DNA of 64,000 nucleotides, taken from the IMG/VR virus record IMGVR_UViG_3300042289_000986, positions 62,001-126,000 of that record; one strand, written 5' to 3'. The translations under genes and the position numbers were made by a program. Below are positions 3,188 to 56,243 of the stretch, piece after piece; the first letter of the stretch is position 1, and each line of letters opens with the position of its first letter. A model generated the notes under the pieces. It did not search any database, was not told the origin of the DNA, and saw only the letters and a list, made by a program, of their open reading frames with translations.

Positions 3188-3196
3188 TTTTGAAAG

Positions 3197-3653
3197 TGGA
3201 GGTGAGGAGAGTTGAACTCCTGTCCAAATAATCTAGGCTAAAAGGTCTACATGTTTGAGTGTCTTTAGCATTTCAGCCACCATACGGTAACGGAGACTTT
3301 AGGCTGCATAGTGACACTAACTGAGTTTATAGTCTGCCTGTAGACATTATCGCAATCTACATACGGTTGATATTTTGTTGTTACGTTAGAACTACCAACA
3401 ATCTAACAACCTCTGCTATCAATGATTCTTTAGAGGATCCAGAATCAAGGTTCTTAGGCGGCTAAGAGCATCTCTTCATCCGCATATGAGGCGAGAACCT
3501 CATCAGCGTTGTTGAAAATACTCTCGGCTTCTGCCAAGAGATCAGAAGTGAAATCTTCTGCATTTAGTTTTTTAATCGATTTTTTACGAGGCCATCGATT
3601 AACCTCGACATGCACTTTTAGTTTCAACTATCTGTCGAAACCAGTACACCCCC
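3197..3653 (-). ncRNA. ssrA: tmRNA (about 457 nt)
   Basis: 5' GGGGGTGTACTGGTTTCGAC; 3' GACAGGAGTTCAACTCTCCTCACCTCCA; acceptor stem with G3.U70; internal tag frame 3561-3454 ending LLAA-stop. Confidence 0.95.
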
Positions 3654-9657: not shown

Positions 9658-9744
9658 GGTGCGATGGCTGAGTGGTCTAAAGCAGGAGTTTACTAAACTC
9701 TCGAAGTTTAATCGCTTCCGTGGGTTCGAATCCTACTCGCACCG
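9658..9744 (+). tRNA. tRNA-Ser(ACT)
   Basis: Acceptor GGTGCGA/TCGCACC, G73, long variable arm, loop TT-ACT-AA. Confidence 0.88.
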
Positions 9745-20196: not shown

Positions 20197-20231
20197 TATG
20201 ATATATTTACTCCAAATTTAATCAATTTAAT

Positions 20232-20444
20232 ATGATAAATATGAATATAGTGAACGTGGCAGATACTTCTTTATATAAAGAATTCTTAGCAATGAGAGAA
20301 GAAGTCATGAAACACAAGTGGTATGAATCCGAAAAAGCTGGATATGATATCGGCTTCGCAAGAGCAGTGATTGATTGGACAATGAGGTTTAAAACTCAGT
20401 GGATTAAAAATAGAAAAAAAAAAATTAAGATTCTTTGTATCTAG
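20232..20444 (+). CDS. DUF4032-like small protein
   Basis: SLYKEFLAMREEVMKHKWYESEKAGYDIGF..AVIDW. Confidence 0.7.
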   Translation: MINMNIVNVADTSLYKEFLAMREEVMKHKWYESEKAGYDIGFARAVIDWTMRFKTQWIKNRKKKIKILCI

Positions 20445-20700
20445 GTGAATGGGAAAGATCAATTATAATTTCTCGCATTTTATCAAATTTTTGATATAAT
20501 GGCTTGAGATCTTCAGAAGTAAAAGCATCTTTTAAGTTTTGATCGTTTAAAAGAGACTCTACTGTATTTAAAGCTTTAAAAAAAGCTTCTTTAGCAAGTC
20601 TTTTTGATCTAGCTTTTCTTAAAAAATAATCGGAACTATATTCTTTTAATATTTCATTTTCATATGCTTCGGATAACATATTTAAATCTTTTCTATTCAT
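20425..20700 (-). CDS. Small protein with KDxxxLxEAY leader
   Basis: MNRKDLNMLSEAYENEILKE; TAAATA upstream. Confidence 0.55.
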   Translation of the reverse strand: MNRKDLNMLSEAYENEILKEYSSDYFLRKARSKRLAKEAFFKALNTVESLLNDQNLKDAFTSEDLKPLYQKFDKMREIIIDLSHSPRYKES

Positions 20701-20759
20701 TATTTAATATTTACAAAAAATACTTGTATCTTTTTAAAAATATGCCATAATTATATTCT

Positions 20760-21287
20760 ATGGTTAAAACATATATCAAACTAATGGTAGTTGGAATTAT
20801 TGCATTGACTTCTACAGTCATGGCTGGTTCTGACTTGAAATCAAGCAAAGAAGTCGTTGTAGATTCTTGCCGCTTTCGCAGCAATGAACTCCAATTAGAC
20901 CTCTTTGGTTCTGGTGCGTTCTATAAGCAAGGTAAACCTGCTTGGGGTGGTGGCGTTGGTGTCAACTACTTCTTCCTCAAGTATGTTGGACTTGGCGTAG
21001 AACAAACCTTGGTTGGTCGTGAAGATGTTGCTGAATGGGGAACATTCGGTAACTTGTTTCTTCGCTATCCAATCTGTTCTTGGAACGTAGCACCTTATGC
21101 CGTTGCTGGTCTTGGTGCTCTCTACGGACAAACCAAAGCAATCCTTGCTGGAACTGTTGGTGGCGGTCTTGAGTATCGCATCACTGACAATATTGGCATC
21201 TTTGCAGATGCTCGTTGGCTTTACAATGCCAACGTCAGCAACAGTGGAGCAGTTGTTGCTCGCACTGGTATCAAATTTGCTTTTTAA
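20760..21287 (+). CDS. Small outer-membrane beta-barrel (OmpA/OmpW/Ail-like)
   Basis: Sec signal (..VMA-G), amphipathic strands GGGVGVNYF, PYAVAGLG, VGGGLEYR, terminal GIKFAF. Confidence 0.85.
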   Translation: MVKTYIKLMVVGIIALTSTVMAGSDLKSSKEVVVDSCRFRSNELQLDLFGSGAFYKQGKPAWGGGVGVNYFFLKYVGLGVEQTLVGREDVAEWGTFGNLFLRYPICSWNVAPYAVAGLGALYGQTKAILAGTVGGGLEYRITDNIGIFADARWLYNANVSNSGAVVARTGIKFAF

Positions 21288-21300
21288 TTAAAGTAAATCA

Positions 21301-21371
21301 TGGCTCGTAGTGTAACGGTAACACCAGAGAATTTGGATCTCTTATTCATAGTTCGAATCTATGCGAGCCAG
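21301..21371 (+). tRNA. tRNA-Gln(TTG)
   Basis: TGGCTCG/CGAGCCA; AGAGA-AT-TTG-GA-TCTCT. Confidence 0.88.
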
Positions 21372-21375
21372 TTTT

Positions 21376-21458
21376 GGGTAAGCGGTAACGTTGGAGAGTT
21401 ACTTCAGACTGTAAATCTGACGCCATTGGCTTAGTAGGTTCGAATCCTTCCTTACCCA
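21376..21458 (+). tRNA. tRNA-Tyr(GTA)
   Basis: TCAGA-CT-GTA-AA-TCTGA; V-arm GCC/GGC. Confidence 0.92.
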
Positions 21459-21475
21459 TTTTCTTTGAAATTTTA

Positions 21476-21566
21476 GCTGGATTAGTGTAACTGGAAGCAC
21501 CGACAGTTTTATAAACTGTGTGCCCTAGATGAGGGCCGAGCGCGGGTTCAATTCCCGCATCCAGCA
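21476..21566 (+). tRNA. tRNA with TAT (Ile) anticodon and long variable arm
   Basis: GCTGGAT/ATCCAGC; ACAGT-TT-TAT-AA-ACTGT; V-arm GCCCT-AGATG-AGGGC; A73. Confidence 0.85.
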
Positions 21567-21572
21567 TTTTTC

Positions 21573-21592
21573 GCACAGTTAGCTCAGTGGTA
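21573..21592 (+). pseudogene. 5' fragment of a tRNA gene, truncated by the HNH gene
   Basis: GCACAGT-TAGCTCAGTGGTA after the usual T-rich spacer, no continuation. Confidence 0.7.
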
Positions 21593-21998
21593 TGTTTAAA
21601 TTCTTAATCCTATATCTTTTCTTATATGTGGATCTTTTAGAATTTTTTCTGTTTCTGCTACAATAAGTGTCTGTCTGTGAATGACAATTTGGACAAAGCA
21701 ATCTAATATTATTAGGATAGTTATTATCGGAATTACCATCAATATGATCTAAATGTAATGATATGTCTTTATTTTTCCAATTTGATATTTCACAAACCTC
21801 ACATTTATATCCTCTTTTAAATTGTAAAAATTTTTTTAAAGTAGCAGCTTGTGAACATTTATTAGATTCTATTTTAGGAATAGTTATATTGTTAAATGTA
21901 TAGTTTCCTTGACAAGTATTGTTACAATACTTTCCAAAACTTTTACTTTCATCGTATTTTATTTCTTTTTTACAGTTTAAACAAAAAGAAGTTTTCAT
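21579..21998 (-). CDS. HNH homing endonuclease
   Basis: CLNC..CNNTC; CEVC..LHLDHIDGN..N...NIRLLCPNCHSQT. Confidence 0.9.
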   Translation of the reverse strand: MKTSFCLNCKKEIKYDESKSFGKYCNNTCQGNYTFNNITIPKIESNKCSQAATLKKFLQFKRGYKCEVCEISNWKNKDISLHLDHIDGNSDNNYPNNIRLLCPNCHSQTDTYCSRNRKNSKRSTYKKRYRIKNLNIPLS

Positions 21999-22004
21999 AT
22001 ATCA

Positions 22005-22048
22005 TATTTATCCGAGCTATTATACATAAATAAGAGGTCGGATAAATA
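22005..22048. repeat. Inverted repeat carrying outward-facing TAAATA boxes
   Basis: TATTTATCCGA ... TCGGATAAATA (11-bp perfect arms). Confidence 0.7.
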
Positions 22049-22093
22049 AAATATAGTTGATTAATAAGATATTTTAATATAATATATAAATAT

Positions 22094-22167
22094 GGGAGGT
22101 TGTTGTAATGGTAGCGATTCGCATTTACACTGCGACAGCAAAGGTTCGATTCCTTTACCTCCTACCA
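22094..22167 (+). tRNA. tRNA-Val(TAC)
   Basis: TCGCA-TT-TAC-AC-TGCGA; ACCA end. Confidence 0.88.
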
Positions 22168-22170
22168 TTT

Positions 22171-22241
22171 GGGGGATTAGTTAAGTGGTATAACTCCTGA
22201 TTTGCATTCAGGTGTCACCAGTTCGACTCTGGTATCCTCCA
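22171..22241 (+). tRNA. tRNA-Ala(TGC)
   Basis: G3.U70; CCTGA-TT-TGC-AT-TCAGG. Confidence 0.92.
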
Positions 22242-22284
22242 CTTTTTTCTTGTCATTATTTAAACATCTGCTAGACTTAAAAAT

Positions 22285-22572
22285 ATGAATTCTTATATCA
22301 CCGAATTTTTTGGAATATTGATGATGCTTAGTTTTATGCTTTGTTATATTCCACAAATTGTTAAAATTTATAAAAACAAATCATCAGAAGATGTTTCTCT
22401 GATGTTAATTTTAATGTCTATTGTTGGTTATATCTCAGGGATGATTTATATGTTTTTAACTGCTTTTGGTCTTTGGTGGTTTTTAAATTATTGTGTGGGT
22501 TTGATCATGTGTTCTATACTTGTTTATGCATGGTTTAAATTTAAAAAAGATAAAGATTACGATTCTTATTAA
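22285..22572 (+). CDS. PQ-loop / SemiSWEET-like 3-TM transporter
   Basis: YIPQIVKIYKNKSSEDVS; three TM helices; Asn in TM3. Confidence 0.8.
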   Translation: MNSYITEFFGILMMLSFMLCYIPQIVKIYKNKSSEDVSLMLILMSIVGYISGMIYMFLTAFGLWWFLNYCVGLIMCSILVYAWFKFKKDKDYDSY

Positions 22573-22574
22573 AA

Positions 22575-22973
22575 ATGAAAAAAGTAATCACTGTAGATTT
22601 TGATGATACTTTAGCTGCTACAGAAGATGGTGCTTGGTATAGCACAAGCTTGGTGCCGATTCCAAGAATTCTAAATTTTGTTAAACAAAAACATAAAGAA
22701 GGATACGAAATCCATATTGTAACTTTTAGAAATTGGCAAAACAAAGCAGACGTTGAAAGGTTTTGTCAAATACACAAACTACCAATTTCATCTATTGTCT
22801 GCACAGAAGGAACAAACAAAGTTCCCTTTTTAAAGAAACTTAATAGTGAACTTCATGTTGATGATAGTGTAGAAGTTTGTACGCTATGTATAATGGCAAA
22901 AATTGATATTTTGCTTGTTGATTGGGGACAAGATGAACACAACACTACTGCTAAATTTATGCCAAAAATTTAA
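22575..22973 (+). CDS. HAD-superfamily phosphatase
   Basis: DFDDTL, IVT, K, HVDD. Confidence 0.8.
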   Translation: MKKVITVDFDDTLAATEDGAWYSTSLVPIPRILNFVKQKHKEGYEIHIVTFRNWQNKADVERFCQIHKLPISSIVCTEGTNKVPFLKKLNSELHVDDSVEVCTLCIMAKIDILLVDWGQDEHNTTAKFMPKI

Positions 22974-23065
22974 ACAAAAGATACCATATCAAGAAAGCTA
23001 ATATATAGTATCTCACAAAAATATTTATTTGCATTTGCCAATTAAAGTGTTATATTTTTAGTACT

Positions 23066-23356
23066 ATGATTAAAACTGTACAAAAGAAAGAAGAGTTCTT
23101 CATCGAATTTACAGATGAAGAAATGAATGAATTGGGGTTTAAACCTAATACAAAATTCACAGTAGAATTAAGTGAAGACAAAAGTGGTTTAAAGTTAATT
23201 CCCCACGAAGAAATTGATATCGATCTTAATGAATTTTCAAAAGAAGATTTAATTAATATTATTGTTGCTGCAAATAAGGTAGATATGACTTTTGAAGATT
23301 TTGTTGTTGACTCTTTGACAAAATTCTGTGAAGCTCATAAAGAAGAAGAAGACTAA
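23066..23356 (+). CDS. AbrB/MazE-like DNA-binding protein
   Basis: FFIEFTDEEMNELGFKPNTKFTVE pattern. Confidence 0.5.
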   Translation: MIKTVQKKEEFFIEFTDEEMNELGFKPNTKFTVELSEDKSGLKLIPHEEIDIDLNEFSKEDLINIIVAANKVDMTFEDFVVDSLTKFCEAHKEEED

Positions 23357-23359
23357 AAT

Positions 23360-23734
23360 ATGTTAGTAGTCAAAAACAAATTGGCTCCTAGTTCTATACA
23401 TGGATTGGGTGTTTTTGCGGAAGAATTTATTCCTTCTGGTTCGGTTATATGGAAATGGTATAATGGTATAGATGGTAAAACAACTATTGAAACTATAAAA
23501 TCTTTACCAATAGCTTGTCGGGATTTTTTTAAAGTTTATGGTTGGTCTGAAAATGGTATATACAAATATTGTATAGATAATCAAAAATATATAAATCATT
23601 CCGATACACCGAATTGTATTCTTATTGATGGTGGAAATACAGGAATAGCAAATAAAAATATTGACGTTGGAGAAGAAATCACAGAAGATTATAAATCATT
23701 CGTTGATAATTTTGATATAAAAGATTTTAAATAA
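23360..23734 (+). CDS. SET-domain protein-lysine methyltransferase
   Basis: SSIHGLGVFA, YINHSDTPNC, ANKNIDVGEEITEDY. Confidence 0.9.
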   Translation: MLVVKNKLAPSSIHGLGVFAEEFIPSGSVIWKWYNGIDGKTTIETIKSLPIACRDFFKVYGWSENGIYKYCIDNQKYINHSDTPNCILIDGGNTGIANKNIDVGEEITEDYKSFVDNFDIKDFK

Positions 23735-23736
23735 TT

Positions 23737-24423
23737 ATGAAAGGTTTATTTTACGGTTCTGTTCGCCAAGAAGCAAAAAACCACGAAATTTTATTCTGGG
23801 GTTGCTTGCACTGGCATCACAATCCAAAGTGGGATATCCCCATTTGGAAACGTAGAGGATTTGAGTCCGTACAAGAACACGACGAAGCTATTGTTTTAAA
23901 TTGGAATAGTAAAGCAACAGATAAAACAATTGGATTTATTCTTGGTGACACCATGTTTGGATATGGTGGTCAAGAAGAATTCACGAAACTCATGCGCCGT
24001 TTAAAGTTTCAGCGTTTGTTTATCATGTCTGGTAATCACACGGCAGGATGGAAACAATCATTTGAAAGTATCAAAGATAATACACTTTATATTGATGGAT
24101 ATCATAAAGAAGTAATATTTGTTCCAAATTATTTGGAAGCATATATTAACGGTCAGCCTATTGTCATGTGCCACTATCCAATTTTGTCTTGGAACGGAGC
24201 AGGAAAAGGTTCGTGGATGCTTTTTAGTCATGTTCATGGTTCACTTGTAAACAGTGAGCTTGGACGTATGTATTTGAAAGATGGAGGTTGTAACTTGGAA
24301 GTTTCCGTAGAAGCAACAAAATTTCCTTTGACTTATGGTGAAATTGGTGCTATTATGAAAACTAAATCTAAATTTAAAACAGATCATCATGACGAAAAGG
24401 CATCGACCCCATTTAGTTATTAA
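23737..24423 (+). CDS. Calcineurin-like phosphoesterase (first-motif Asp replaced by Cys)
   Basis: GCLHWHH, LGD, GNH, CHYP, SHVH. Confidence 0.75.
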   Translation: MKGLFYGSVRQEAKNHEILFWGCLHWHHNPKWDIPIWKRRGFESVQEHDEAIVLNWNSKATDKTIGFILGDTMFGYGGQEEFTKLMRRLKFQRLFIMSGNHTAGWKQSFESIKDNTLYIDGYHKEVIFVPNYLEAYINGQPIVMCHYPILSWNGAGKGSWMLFSHVHGSLVNSELGRMYLKDGGCNLEVSVEATKFPLTYGEIGAIMKTKSKFKTDHHDEKASTPFSY

Positions 24424-42535: not shown

Positions 42536-43077
42536 TTATACTAAGTTAACAAATTATAAACAGTTTGTCAACTTAAAAATCAAGGTAATTGAATTTGGAT
42601 TGTGTTTCCTTGAATTGGAGAAGAGTTTATTGGTATATCTTTTGGAACAAAAACTGGATTCTGTGATGGTTGTTGCTCTGCCATATTAGTTATTTCACCT
42701 ATTTTTAACCCCACATCTTTAATCAAAGAAATGGCTTTTTTTGATTTTCCATATAGCTGAATTAAATCACTTTTTTGTTCTGGTGTTAATGTTGGGTTAT
42801 TTTTAATGCATTGTGCAATTTTAGACATACCCGTCATTAAATAAACAAAACTGTCTGAGAGATCATCCACAATCGTTTGTAATGGCCAAGGGAAAGCAAC
42901 TGATGCGTCTGGTGGTGGTGTTGTTAAATTATCAGTTGGAAAGTTTCTTTGGTTTTGATAATTATAGCCGTCTTTAGTTGGTATAGGAGCAAAGTCTTTT
43001 CTTGGTGGTGCATTGTATGCTGGATACTGTGCAGGACCCCTATCATAGACTTCTTCTATAATTTTTTCCAAATTCAT

Positions 43078-54380: not shown

Positions 54381-56243
54381 ATGGGAAGAAAAAAAAAGAC
54401 GGATAATCCTTTAGTAGATGTCGATAGTATAACTCCAGAAGATGTTTTAGTTGATGCTTCCTTTTATAAAGGAAATGAAAATCTTTTAAGAGGAAATTCT
54501 CAGTTCAAATGGACTGATGAGATGATTGATGAATTAAAATTATGCAATAAAAGTATTTTACATTTTGCAGAAAATTATTTTTATATTACGACACTTGATG
54601 AAGGAAAAAAGAAAATAGAATTATACAAATATCAAAAACGTCTTTTAAAAGCATTTAAAGGCAATCGCTTTAATGTTGTTTTATCATCTCGTCAATCTGG
54701 AAAAACCACAACAATAACAATATATGCTCTTTGGATTGTTTGTTTTCAAAGCGATAAGAGAATTACTATTGTAGCCAACAAAGAATCAACAGCAAAAGAA
54801 ATATTTGCTCGTATCAAAATGGCATTTGAGCAATTACCAATTTGGATGAAACCAAGTGTTAAATCTTGGAGAAAGGATGGATTTCTTTTGGCCAATGATT
54901 CAGCAATTACTATTAGCACAACATCAAGTGCTGGTCCTCGCGGATCAACCAGTAATCTTTTGATTATTGATGAAATGGCTCACTGTCCAAACGAATTAAT
55001 GAAAGAGCTTTGGAAATCTGCGATTCCAATTATTTCATCTTCCAAAAAATCTCAAATTGTTGTTATTAGTACTCCAAACGGTACAGATAATAAATTTTAC
55101 GATTTATATAAAGAGTCACAAAAAGATAAAGCAGAATGGCACTGTGAAGTCGTAAATTGGTTTGATGTGCCTGGACGAGATGAAGAATGGAAAGTTCAAA
55201 CTATTGCTGCTATGGGTTCAAAAGAAGATTTTGATCAAGAGTTTGGGAATGTCTTCCATGAACCAGGTAAAACTGCAATTGATCCAGAACTTTTAGCAGA
55301 ATTAAAAAGTCAATGCAAAGAACCAATTTTAGTCATGGACAACGGAGCTTATAAAATTTTTGAGGAACCAAACCCACAAAGTTTTTATGCTATAGGTGTT
55401 GACGTTGGAGAGGGTATTGGAAGATCAAATACCGTAGCTCAAATTTTAGATGTTTCCGATTTAACTAATATTAAACAAGTGGCAATTTATTCTAGCAATC
55501 AGATGAGTCCATTTCATTTTGGTACTCGTTTAATGGGAGTTTTAGAAGATTGGGGGCGTCCACCAATACTTGTAGAAAATAACAATAATGGACAACAAGT
55601 TTTGGATGTTTTATGTCATACTCATAACTACGAATCAGTCGTTTCTTATAAATTTGAAGGGTTTAGTCAACATTATAATAATGAAAACCGATTTGGTATT
55701 CACAATCACACCAATACTAGATATAAAGGAATAACAAATTTTAGATATTGGGCAAATAGTTTAAAGGCTGTTAAACTATTTGATTTAGATACTCTTTTAG
55801 AATTGGAAACTTTTGTTCGTCTTCCAAATTATACTTTTAGTAAAAGAAAAGATGATGACTTGGATGATAGAGTATTAGCTTTAATATGGGGATTGTTTAT
55901 ATTAGATCCATCAATAGCGGTAAAATATTATCAAATAATAGATACAGACGACCAAGGAAGACCTTTAAAAATACAACCAATTGTTGATAATAGTGAATTA
56001 ATTAAAAAAAGTCCATTATGTAGCGGAAAAGCTTCTACATTTAAAAAATCTATAAACCCAAATGCTTCGTTTTCTTTTGTTGGAAAAATTGAAGAAAATA
56101 AAGTAATGGGATTAGACGAGGAAGCTGCTTCCCTTCAACAGTGGCTTTTAAATTGGAATAATCCACCACCAAAATCAACAGAAACTGACAATTCGGATAA
56201 GTTATATAATAAGGATAACTACCAACCAGTGATATTATTTTAA
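54381..56243 (+). CDS. Terminase large subunit (gp17-like)
   Basis: SRQSGKTT, LIIDE, ISTPNG, FDQEF, GVDVGEG, DDRV. Confidence 0.96.
   Translation: MGRKKKTDNPLVDVDSITPEDVLVDASFYKGNENLLRGNSQFKWTDEMIDELKLCNKSILHFAENYFYITTLDEGKKKIELYKYQKRLLKAFKGNRFNVVLSSRQSGKTTTITIYALWIVCFQSDKRITIVANKESTAKEIFARIKMAFEQLPIWMKPSVKSWRKDGFLLANDSAITISTTSSAGPRGSTSNLLIIDEMAHCPNELMKELWKSAIPIISSSKKSQIVVISTPNGTDNKFYDLYKESQKDKAEWHCEVVNWFDVPGRDEEWKVQTIAAMGSKEDFDQEFGNVFHEPGKTAIDPELLAELKSQCKEPILVMDNGAYKIFEEPNPQSFYAIGVDVGEGIGRSNTVAQILDVSDLTNIKQVAIYSSNQMSPFHFGTRLMGVLEDWGRPPILVENNNNGQQVLDVLCHTHNYESVVSYKFEGFSQHYNNENRFGIHNHTNTRYKGITNFRYWANSLKAVKLFDLDTLLELETFVRLPNYTFSKRKDDDLDDRVLALIWGLFILDPSIAVKYYQIIDTDDQGRPLKIQPIVDNSELIKKSPLCSGKASTFKKSINPNASFSFVGKIEENKVMGLDEEAASLQQWLLNWNNPPPKSTETDNSDKLYNKDNYQPVILF

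What the first reader, a model, noticed from the sequence alone, without database searches (positions are those of the whole stretch)
21573..22167. HNH endonuclease apparently replacing a tRNA gene
Seen: a tRNA begins (GCACAGTTAGCTCAGTGGTA) and is cut off by an antisense HNH ORF whose stop codon lies inside the remnant. Beyond the HNH are an 11-bp inverted repeat with outward TAAATA boxes and an intact but atypical tRNA-Val(TAC). Known: free-standing homing endonucleases spread in phage tRNA clusters (T4 SegB). Inference: an HNH plus cleavage-resistant tRNA cassette displaced the ancestral tRNA and supplies a promoter for downstream tRNAs.
Basis: partly seen in the sequence, partly recalled or inferred. 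Interest (0 to 1): 0.6.

Follow-up and report, generated by a model that had tools for sequence, protein, structure and literature searches.

The report
Homing endonuclease cassette replaced a phage tRNA
In this lake-water phage a selfish HNH nuclease gene that travels with its own valine tRNA has overwritten the phage's original valine tRNA gene, leaving a 20-base stub; a related phage without the nuclease still has the original gene intact at the same spot.

Summary
Window 21573-21592 is the first 20 nt of a tRNA-Val(TAC). An HNH-less relative (L006) has that tRNA intact at the same place, between tRNA-Ile(TAT) and tRNA-Ala; L005 also has it intact next to tRNA-Ala.

In the window, 50 nt of the old tRNA are replaced by 570 nt (21593-22162). 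This block holds:
- an antisense 139-aa HNH gene, whose last codons and stop are read from the stub;
- a strong hairpin over the HNH start codon;
- a promoter-like box;
- a complete but divergent tRNA-Val(TAC), now the only tRNA-Val in the 211.6-kb genome.

The new tRNA belongs to a real tRNA-Val lineage found in other large phages without the HNH.

The HNH belongs to a large phage family (at least 586 IMG/VR hits) that sits almost always inside tRNA clusters. Its clades are tied to single isoacceptors: Val, Thr, Gly and Met. The layout "stub, HNH, intact tRNA-Val" recurs in L013. A parallel Thr(GGT)-to-Thr(AGT) case occurs in L064.

Nuclease activity, target site, immunity of the new tRNA and promoter function are all inferred. 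This is a new variant of a known kind, analogous to T4 SegB and the T5 F-Tfl enzymes. Interest is moderate.

The parts
21476..21566 (+). tRNA-Ile(TAT), 91 nt with a long variable arm. It is the left neighbour, conserved in both the HNH-plus and HNH-less alleles.
   Evidence: ARAGORN; Rfam tRNA 50.2 bits; aligned with L006.
21573..21592 (+). Stub of the ancestral tRNA-Val(TAC): acceptor 5' strand, positions 8-9, D-stem 5' strand and D-loop. The next 4 nt (21593-21596) may be decayed D-stem.
   Evidence: 20/20 identity to intact tRNA-Val in L006 and L005. The blastn homology to L006 ends exactly at 21592.
21579..21998 (-). Free-standing HNH (His-Me finger) endonuclease gene, 139 aa. It has an N-terminal Cys4 finger, an HNH core and a basic tail. 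The last five codons and the stop are read from the antisense of the tRNA stub.
   Evidence: Invariant residues are C6, C9, C25, C29, C66, C69, D84, H85, N93, N97, C102, C105 and H106. It is the only copy in the genome.
21593..22162 (.). The 570-nt block that stands where L006 has 50 nt of tRNA-Val (L006 9987-10036).
   Evidence: Alignment A1; blastn breakpoints.
21998..22055 (-). Leader hairpin of the HNH mRNA. The core 11-bp arms are 22005-22015 and 22038-22048. The AUG lies in the base of the stem.
   Evidence: the repeat finder pair I1. RNA fold -20.4 kcal/mol, z -5.65, with 0 of 200 shuffles as stable. Hairpins over the Shine-Dalgarno box or AUG also occur in L011, L014 and L015.
22057..22092 (+). 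Promoter-like element: TTGATT, a 15-nt spacer, TATAAT (22057-22083), then TATAAATA (22085-22092), ending 1 nt before the new tRNA-Val.
   Evidence: It is below the threshold of the sigma-70 scan because of the 15-nt spacer. The same TTGATG-15-TATAAT form lies before the old tRNA-Val in L005.
22094..22167 (+). Intact replacement tRNA-Val(TAC) with an unusual D-arm, G1-U72, A73 and an encoded CCA. It is the only tRNA-Val in the genome.
   Evidence: 11 of 22 pairs show compensatory changes among five homologues. The same tRNA type occurs without an adjacent HNH in L091, L093 and L094.
22171..22242 (+). tRNA-Ala(TGC), the right neighbour. Its 3-nt spacing from tRNA-Val is the same in L006 (L005 has 2 nt).

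Best explanation
The block 21593-22162 is a mobile cassette built around a free-standing HNH homing endonuclease gene that is linked to its own tRNA-Val(TAC).

Shown: the ancestral arrangement Ile(TAT), Val(TAC), Ala, preserved in L006, was converted. All but the first 20 nt and the last 5 nt of the resident tRNA-Val were replaced by the antisense HNH gene, its leader hairpin, a promoter-like box and a divergent tRNA-Val of the same anticodon.

Inferred mechanism:
- The HNH enzyme cuts or nicks tRNA-Val genes of the resident type in phages that lack it, during co-infection.
- The break is repaired by recombination with the cassette-bearing genome.
- The cassette's own tRNA-Val is too divergent to be cut, and it keeps GUA decoding intact, so the replacement costs the phage little.
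- The stub persists because it supplies the HNH gene's last codons and stop codon, and it may serve as a left homology arm.
- HNH expression is probably kept low by the hairpin that buries its start codon, and by transcription of the tRNA operon running antisense through it.
For: - Allele comparison: L006 and L005 carry the intact tRNA at the place of the stub. Homology to L006 breaks exactly at 21592 and resumes in the tRNA 3' end.
- Sporadic distribution: the HNH is absent from L006 and L005 and present in the window, L004, L007/L009 and L008.
- Intact enzyme: all Zn-binding and catalytic residues are invariant across 13 homologues.
- Family behaviour: more than 586 IMG/VR hits, nearly all inside tRNA clusters. 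49 of 85 ORFs end within -80 to +30 nt of a tRNA.
- Isoacceptor clustering: the abutting isoacceptor needs 17 changes on the HNH tree, against a mean of 30 and a minimum of 25 in 500 shuffles. The window's clade and its sister clades are all next to Val(TAC), in different neighbour contexts.
- Recurrence of the layout: L013 has a 24-nt stub, an antisense HNH ending in the same PLS-stop, and an intact but different tRNA-Val. L012 has the same HNH clade and the same new tRNA type, lying between two protein genes that are adjacent in the window. L064 has a 27-nt stub identical to an intact Thr(GGT) in L097, then a sense HNH, then Thr(AGT).
- L036 and L076 have the HNH beside a tRNA split by a group I intron, as in collaborative homing.
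- The new tRNA is a real tRNA lineage and the genome's only tRNA-Val.
- Leader hairpin: z -5.65.
- Known analogues: SegB cleaves inside tRNA genes and drags flanking tRNA genes along; the T5 F-Tfl HNH genes lie in the tRNA cluster (PMC2330249). A TflIV-like HNH lies 6 nt upstream of tRNA-Leu in coliphage ACG-C40.
Against: - No cleavage data exist, and the target site is unknown.
- The HNH-less relative is only 83-91% identical in the flanks. The event may be old, and no polymorphism for the cassette was seen in the lake runs laid.
- All HNH-plus contigs are 100% identical over the locus. They are one lineage, not independent events.
- In L011 and L015 the same HNH clade sits beside an intact tRNA-Val of ordinary type. 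Ordinary tRNA-Val genes are therefore not always destroyed.
- tRNAs abutting HNH genes do not have unusual D-arms more often than other tRNAs: 43/54 against 222/271 lack the common D-arm motif.
- The promoter-like box has a 15-nt spacer and fails a standard sigma-70 scan.
- Clustering of tRNA type on the HNH tree can partly reflect shared descent.
Confidence: 0.72

Rival explanations
1. Redundancy and decay. The HNH first landed in the spacer downstream of an intact resident tRNA-Val, as in L011 and L015. A second tRNA-Val then came to lie on its other side. The now redundant resident tRNA later lost its 3' two thirds by a simple deletion. On this reading the stub marks a later deletion, not the homing junction or the cut site.
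For: In alignment A3 the window and L013 look like the L011/L015 layout minus tRNA positions about 25 to 76. The conserved HNH C-terminus is fused directly to the tRNA 3' end in L011 and L015, and to about position 24 in L013 and the window. L012 seems to have an even shorter 12-nt stub. Stub lengths differ between loci: 12, 20-24, 27 and 43 nt.
Against: The new tRNA-Val has the same 3-nt spacing to tRNA-Ala as the old one in L006. That fits allele replacement by conversion better than addition followed by deletion. No contig with both an intact old and an intact new tRNA-Val flanking the HNH was found.
Confidence: 0.2
2. The HNH is a domesticated nuclease that serves the phage, for instance in defence against competing phages or in DNA processing. 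It no longer moves, and the tRNA exchange is an unrelated recombination between phages.
For: The HNH-plus allele is fixed in all 18 or more lake runs that hold the locus, and no empty allele was seen there. The ORF is intact and conserved.
Against: It is absent from related phages. It lies far from the terminase gene at 54381-56243. Family members lie in many different tRNA clusters and contexts, with multiple paralogues per cluster. The cassette sits at another site in L012.
Confidence: 0.06
3. The tRNA is not dead but split. The 20-nt piece is the 5' exon of a tRNA interrupted by an intron that houses the HNH, or it is one half of a split tRNA.
For: Group I introns do occur in tRNA genes beside HNH homologues in L036 and L076.
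Against: There is no Rfam intron hit in 20500-23000 even at E up to 10. The only match to the 3' acceptor complement tried (ACTGTGC) on the plus strand is at 43026. The gene downstream is a complete tRNA with its own acceptor stem. The break is in the D-loop, not the anticodon loop.
Confidence: 0.02

Closest known systems
Phage T4 SegB (GIY-YIG free-standing homing endonuclease in the tRNA gene cluster; PMC2330249, PMC13096335)
   Same: It is a free-standing endonuclease gene inside a phage tRNA cluster and is absent from close relatives. It cleaves inside tRNA genes of the recipient. Its homing carries neighbouring tRNA genes along, so relatives differ in tRNA content. The ORF end touches the next tRNA.
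   Different: SegB is GIY-YIG, not HNH. It recognises the conserved T-arm motif and shows no preference for a tRNA isotype, whereas clades of this HNH family are tied to single isoacceptors. No truncated tRNA stub that supplies the stop codon is described for SegB.
[quoted passage not shown] 2004, pmid 15456135, cited in PMC2330249 and PMC10644984), and TflIV-like genes of T4-like coliphages
   Same: They are HNH enzymes encoded among phage tRNA genes. The window's HNH core matches the TflIV-like gene of coliphage ACG-C40 at about 70% nucleotide identity over 176 bp, and that gene ends 6 nt before tRNA-Leu.
   Different: Those genes are longer (about 200 aa in ACG-C40) and lie on the tRNA strand. 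The primary paper could not be read here, so the target sites cannot be compared. No tRNA replacement with a stub is known to me for them (own knowledge).
Collaborative or trans homing: F-CphI with the psbA intron of cyanophages (own knowledge), and T4 mobE with I-TevIII (PMC2790892)
   Same: A free-standing endonuclease lies next to a gene whose sequence is altered so that the carrier genome is not cut. The endonuclease and the protecting element move together. L036 and L076 show this layout with a group I intron in the tRNA.
   Different: In the window, protection would come from a whole substitute tRNA gene, not from an intron.
Aeromonas phage Aeh1 mobE, which splits nrdA (own knowledge; the Gibb and Edgell 2007 paper on mobE expression control is cited in PMC2330249)
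   Same: An HNH homing endonuclease gene is inserted into a functional gene, and its expression is under tight control.
   Different: There the split gene still works as two pieces. Here the interrupted gene is dead and a second copy does the work.
HNH genes in tRNA arrays of mycobacteriophages and mycobacterial plasmids (PMC5966550, PMC6409571)
   Same: HNH genes are the commonest coding genes inside tRNA arrays and are suspected of generating tRNA repertoire diversity.
   Different: These papers report only co-occurrence. They describe no allele pair, no junction and no isoacceptor specificity.

Membership tests
HNH / His-Me finger endonucleases | HNH motif with the catalytic His, the Asn residues and the last His, plus two CxxC pairs that bind zinc. 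| tested here: met
   Pfam PF01844 21.5 bits against a cut-off of 21.4. PHROG HNH families score E 2.6e-25. D84, H85, N93, N97, H106, C66, C69, C102 and C105 are invariant in 13 homologues.
HNH / His-Me finger endonucleases | Beta-beta-alpha-metal fold. | not tested
   No structure was predicted. The best solved relative by sequence is I-HmuI (1U3E), only at E 0.4.
Free-standing homing endonuclease genes (intronless homing) | Present in some genomes and absent from the same locus of related genomes. | tested here: met
   Absent in L006 and L005; present in the window, L004, L007/L009 and L008.
Free-standing homing endonuclease genes (intronless homing) | Not housed in an intron or intein. | tested here: met
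   No intron family hit in 20500-23000. The ORF is separate and antisense.
Free-standing homing endonuclease genes (intronless homing) | The enzyme cleaves the allele that lacks it, near the insertion point. | not testable with these tools
   This needs a cleavage assay on the L006-type allele.
Free-standing homing endonuclease genes (intronless homing) | Co-conversion of flanking sequence together with the endonuclease gene. | tested here: inconclusive
   A foreign tRNA-Val came in with the HNH. No graded conversion tract can be read, because the only empty allele is 83-91% identical in the flanks.
T5 F-TflIV-like HNH genes of phage tRNA clusters | Sequence similarity to TflIV-type HNH genes, and location among tRNA genes. 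| tested here: met
   About 70% nucleotide match to genes annotated as TflIV-like in T4-like coliphages. The ACG-C40 gene lies in the tRNA cluster, and so does the window's gene. T5 F-TflIV itself was not compared.
SegB / GIY-YIG homing endonucleases | GIY-YIG catalytic domain. | tested here: not met
   Pfam finds HNH and no GIY-YIG domain. It works like SegB but is not a member.
Intron-encoded homing endonucleases in tRNA genes | A self-splicing intron around the ORF, and both tRNA exons present. | tested here: not met
   No intron hit. No 3' exon was found in the window.

The most novel reading that the evidence does not exclude
This HNH family is a set of tRNA-gene-specific homing endonucleases in which each clade is tuned to one isoacceptor gene: Val(TAC), Thr, Gly(GCC) or Met. 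Members spread by overwriting the resident tRNA gene with a linked substitute that reads the same codons and is protected, either by its divergent sequence or by a group I intron. If so, selfish nucleases, rather than codon usage or host defence alone, would drive much of the turnover and the odd sequences of tRNA genes in large phages. The stubs would mark the homing junctions.
Probability: 0.3. Interest if true: 0.65.

Novelty: new variant of a known kind. Interest (0 to 1): 0.5.

Why it matters
Phage tRNA clusters vary greatly between relatives, and the reasons are debated: codon usage, host tRNA degradation, or escape from tRNA-cutting defences. This locus gives a clean natural before-and-after pair. 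It shows a nuclease cassette overwriting a tRNA gene with another tRNA of the same anticodon.

Together with the family-wide link between HNH clades and single isoacceptors, it suggests that selfish endonucleases are a direct cause of tRNA allele turnover in phages. It also offers defined substrates, the L006 allele against the window allele, for testing the specificity of a small 139-aa HNH enzyme.

Tried and rejected
- GenBank phages: a blastn search gave no close relative, only 70% matches to the HNH core of T4-like coliphages plus tRNA matches.
- Split or intron-containing tRNA: rejected. There is no intron hit and no 3' half.
- T4-type late promoter: I considered this for the TAAATA boxes. 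TATAAATA is not enriched in the window (6 found, 11 expected), so I make no late-promoter claim.
- Standard sigma-70 scan: it does not report the box before the new tRNA-Val, because of its 15-nt spacer. TTGAT-N14-16-TATAAT occurs only twice in the window, which is not significant.
- Unusual D-arm as protection: not supported. 43/54 abutting tRNAs lack the common D-arm motif, against 222/271 other tRNAs.
- Further stubs: they were found with a regular expression for the common D-arm. Their canonical look is therefore an ascertainment effect and carries no weight.
- Empty allele in the same lakes: none was found. There were no joints, and the loose ends came only from unrelated tRNAs. The metatranscriptome run X19 covers only 21014-21322 and 21405-21447, so it says nothing on HNH expression.
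- L013 stub: the 24-mer matched only its own contig.
- Constraints: no other genetic code was used.

Full report
**Setting**

The window is bases 62001-126000 of a complete 211,587-bp virus record with direct terminal repeats.
- The genome is 32% G+C and has 20 tRNA genes and a tmRNA gene.
- It encodes a tail sheath, a large terminase, a ribonucleotide reductase and an RNA ligase, so it is a large myovirus-type phage.
- It occurs in at least 18 lake-water metagenome runs.

**The observation**

tRNA-Gln, tRNA-Tyr and a 91-nt tRNA-Ile(TAT) end at 21566. Six bases later the 20-mer at 21573-21592 has the form of a tRNA 5' end: a 7-nt acceptor strand, TA, a GCTC D-stem strand and an AGTGGTA D-loop. 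The tRNA pattern stops there.
- A 139-aa ORF runs on the other strand from 21998 to 21579. Its stop codon is the complement of 21579-21581, inside the 20-mer.
- The ORF is an HNH endonuclease: Pfam 21.5 bits against a cut-off of 21.4, and PHROG E 2.6e-25.
- Beyond its start lie the 11-bp inverted repeat (22005-22015 and 22038-22048), an intact tRNA-Val(TAC) (22094-22167, 57.7 bits) and tRNA-Ala (22171-22242).

An exact search for the 20-mer in IMG/VR found five contigs.
- In L006 the order is Gln, Tyr, Ile(TAT), then after 7 nt an intact 75-nt tRNA-Val(TAC) that begins with the 20-mer, then after 3 nt tRNA-Ala. There is no HNH.
- L005, from a 195-kb contig, has the same intact tRNA-Val next to tRNA-Ala.
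- Both score 70.3 bits as tRNA.
- In alignment A1 the window and L006 run together up to 21592, part, and meet again at the final TACCA of the tRNA. blastn gives the same breakpoints.
- The window therefore has 570 nt (21593-22162) where L006 has 50 nt.
- L004, L007/L009 and L008 carry the HNH allele and are 100% identical to the window over the locus, so they are one lineage.
- Contigs from other lake runs bridge both junctions with no differences.
- L006 is not a sister strain. Its flanks are 83% (left) and 91% (right) identical, so the event cannot be dated as recent.

**The replacement tRNA**

It is the only tRNA-Val in the genome.
- Its D-arm is unusual, but the same tRNA type occurs in L012, L091, L093 and L094, from contigs of 29 to 354 kb.
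- Across those five sequences, 11 of 22 base pairs keep pairing through changes on both sides. It is therefore a working tRNA lineage that is native to other large phages.
- In L091, L093 and L094 no HNH of this clade lies beside it.
- Both old and new tRNA-Val have G1-U72, A73 and an encoded CCA.

**The HNH family**

A locus search found more than 586 relatives in IMG/VR, and 80 loci were fetched.
- Nearly all lie inside tRNA clusters.
- Of 85 distinct ORFs, 49 end within -80 to +30 nt of a tRNA gene. Most are on the same strand, with the stop codon at or inside the tRNA 5' end.
- On a tree of the 85 proteins the abutting isoacceptor needs 17 changes, against a mean of 30 and a minimum of 25 in 500 label shuffles. 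Shared descent inflates this contrast.
- The window's protein groups with L011, L012, L013 and L015, which are all antisense to the tRNA strand and all next to tRNA-Val(TAC). The neighbouring clades are same-strand HNH genes that abut tRNA-Val(TAC) in varied contexts. Other clades abut Gly(GCC), Thr(TGT), Thr(AGT) or Met.
- All zinc-binding and catalytic residues are invariant in the 13 closest members.
- The HNH core also matches, at about 70% nucleotide identity, genes annotated as T5 TflIV-like in T4-like coliphages. In ACG-C40 that gene ends 6 nt before tRNA-Leu in the tRNA cluster.

**Recurrence of the layout**

- L013 (HNH 56% identical) has tRNA-Ile(GAT), a 24-nt tRNA stub, and an antisense HNH ending in the same Pro-Leu-Ser-stop read from the stub. 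A hairpin and an intact tRNA-Val(TAC) of a third type follow.
- The window and L013 align without gaps across the stub and the HNH 3' end. The window's four bases after the 20-mer look like a decayed D-stem. The junction therefore seems to be older than the split of these two cassettes.
- Even so, the window's 20 nt are identical to the local old tRNA-Val, while the L013 stub differs at three positions.
- L012 (61% identical) has the same new tRNA type and perhaps a 12-nt stub. There the cassette lies between the PQ-loop gene and the HAD-like gene, which are adjacent in the window at 22285-22973. That argues the unit can move.
- L011 and L015 have an intact ordinary tRNA-Val with the antisense HNH fused to its 3' end. 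The ORF there stops at the antisense of the anticodon loop.
- L064 comes from a different clade with the HNH on the tRNA strand. It has a 27-nt stub identical to the start of an intact tRNA-Thr(GGT) in L097, then the HNH, then tRNA-Thr(AGT), which reads the same codons.
- L027/L028 and L041 also have stubs before the HNH. These stubs were found with a pattern for the common D-arm, so their canonical form is not evidence.
- In L036 and L076 the tRNA that follows the HNH is split by a group I intron (61.9 and 54.5 bits), with both exons present. This is the layout known as collaborative homing.

**Regulatory elements**

- As RNA on the HNH strand, 22055-21998 folds into a long hairpin: -20.4 kcal/mol, z -5.65, and none of 200 shuffles as stable. 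The AUG sits in the base of the stem.
- The leaders of L011, L014 and L015 also fold over the ribosome-binding site or the AUG. This matches the tight translational control known for T4 endonuclease genes (discussion in PMC2330249).
- Before the new tRNA-Val there is TTGATT, 15 nt, TATAAT, then TATAAATA. L005 has the same form before the old tRNA-Val.
- The box fails the standard scan and is not enriched. A promoter role is only plausible.
- Because the HNH is antisense to the tRNA operon, transcription coming from the gene at 20760-21287 and the three upstream tRNAs would run against it. This is inference.

**Explanation**

The best reading is a free-standing homing endonuclease cassette that replaced the resident tRNA-Val by gene conversion and brought a substitute tRNA with it.
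- Shown: the allele pair, the breakpoints, the intact enzyme motifs, the family's tie to tRNA genes and to Val(TAC), the recurrence of the layout, and the genuine nature of the new tRNA.
- Inferred: cleavage of the old allele, protection of the new one, the role of the stub and the promoter.
- The main rival is that the stub arose by later deletion of a redundant tRNA in an L011-like layout. This would change the order of events, not the nature of the element.
- A domesticated nuclease and a split tRNA are unlikely.

**Comparison with what is known**

- T4 SegB is the closest functional analogue. It lies in the tRNA cluster, cuts inside tRNA genes, and is inherited together with neighbouring tRNA genes (PMC2330249). 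Its homologues are widely linked to tRNAs without isotype preference (PMC13096335). SegB is GIY-YIG, so this gene is not a member of that family.
- The T5 F-Tfl enzymes are HNH genes in a tRNA region, but their sites could not be read here.
- HNH genes in mycobacterial tRNA arrays have been suspected of shaping tRNA repertoires (PMC5966550, PMC6409571).
- New here are a defined allele pair in which a tRNA is overwritten by a same-anticodon substitute, a stub that supplies the nuclease's stop codon, and signs that clades of one HNH family are tied to single isoacceptors.

**Verdict**

It is a new variant of a known kind, of moderate interest (0.5).

Noticed in passing
window 21476-21566; also L006 9869-9959, L013 3829-3923, L015 6274-6366, L016 63-153, L024 4665-4757, L030 4492-4582, L063 1713-1807, L068 4432-4521: The tRNA called Ile(TAT) is 90-95 nt long and has a long, class-II-like variable arm. 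Nine copies from diverse phage contigs share the CTTATAA anticodon loop and an AGAT motif in the variable-arm loop, and 20 of 25 pairs show compensatory changes. A class II body with a UAU anticodon is unusual, and which synthetase charges it is open. One literature search found nothing on it.
   Followed up: partly
L036 3398-3680 and L076 3334-3600: tRNA genes directly downstream of HNH homologues carry group I introns (Rfam RF00028, 54.5 and 61.9 bits), with both exon halves present. This is a collaborative-homing-like layout in phage tRNA genes.
   Followed up: partly
L064 2922-3456; L097 1526-1598: L064 has a 27-nt stub of a tRNA-Thr(GGT), 27/27 identical to the intact gene in L097. A sense-strand HNH and an intact tRNA-Thr(AGT) follow it. 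This parallels the window's layout in another HNH clade.
   Followed up: partly
L011 3398-3472 and L015 3395-3469: The antisense HNH ORFs run into an intact tRNA-Val from its 3' end and stop at a TAA that is the complement of U33-U34-A35 of the anticodon loop. In many other loci the HNH stop lies within the first bases of the next tRNA.
   Followed up: partly
window 3196-3653 (-): A phage-encoded tmRNA gene with the tag peptide ADEEMLLAA. A tmRNA is also called in the HNH loci L039 and L043.
   Followed up: no
window 9658-9744: tRNA-Ser with the anticodon ACT (A at position 34). The same odd anticodon occurs in L006, L012, L013, L020 and L048.
   Followed up: no
window 20760-21287 (+): A 175-aa protein with an apparent N-terminal hydrophobic signal-like segment and a weak outer-membrane beta-barrel match (PF13505, E 0.0035). 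It looks richer in G+C than its surroundings and lies directly upstream of the tRNA-Gln gene. Contigs of a freshwater metatranscriptome run cover 21014-21322.
   Followed up: no
window 22285-22973; L012 2780-3680: A small PQ-loop membrane protein (PF04193, E 1.3e-13) and a HAD-like protein follow the tRNAs. They are conserved in L005, L006 and L012. In L012 the HNH and tRNA-Val cassette lies between them.
   Followed up: partly
window 20200-23800: By eye, genes here have no Shine-Dalgarno-like sequence before their start codons, unlike the HNH homologues in L011, L014, L015, L027 and L064, which have AGGAG-type boxes. This may say something about the host.
   Followed up: no
L041 2801-2843: A 43-nt 5' part of a tRNA with an ACG-type anticodon loop stands before an HNH gene that is followed by tRNA-Val(TAC). 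It differs from the intact tRNA-Arg(ACG) 350 nt upstream. Here the stub and the substitute are not the same isoacceptor.
   Followed up: no
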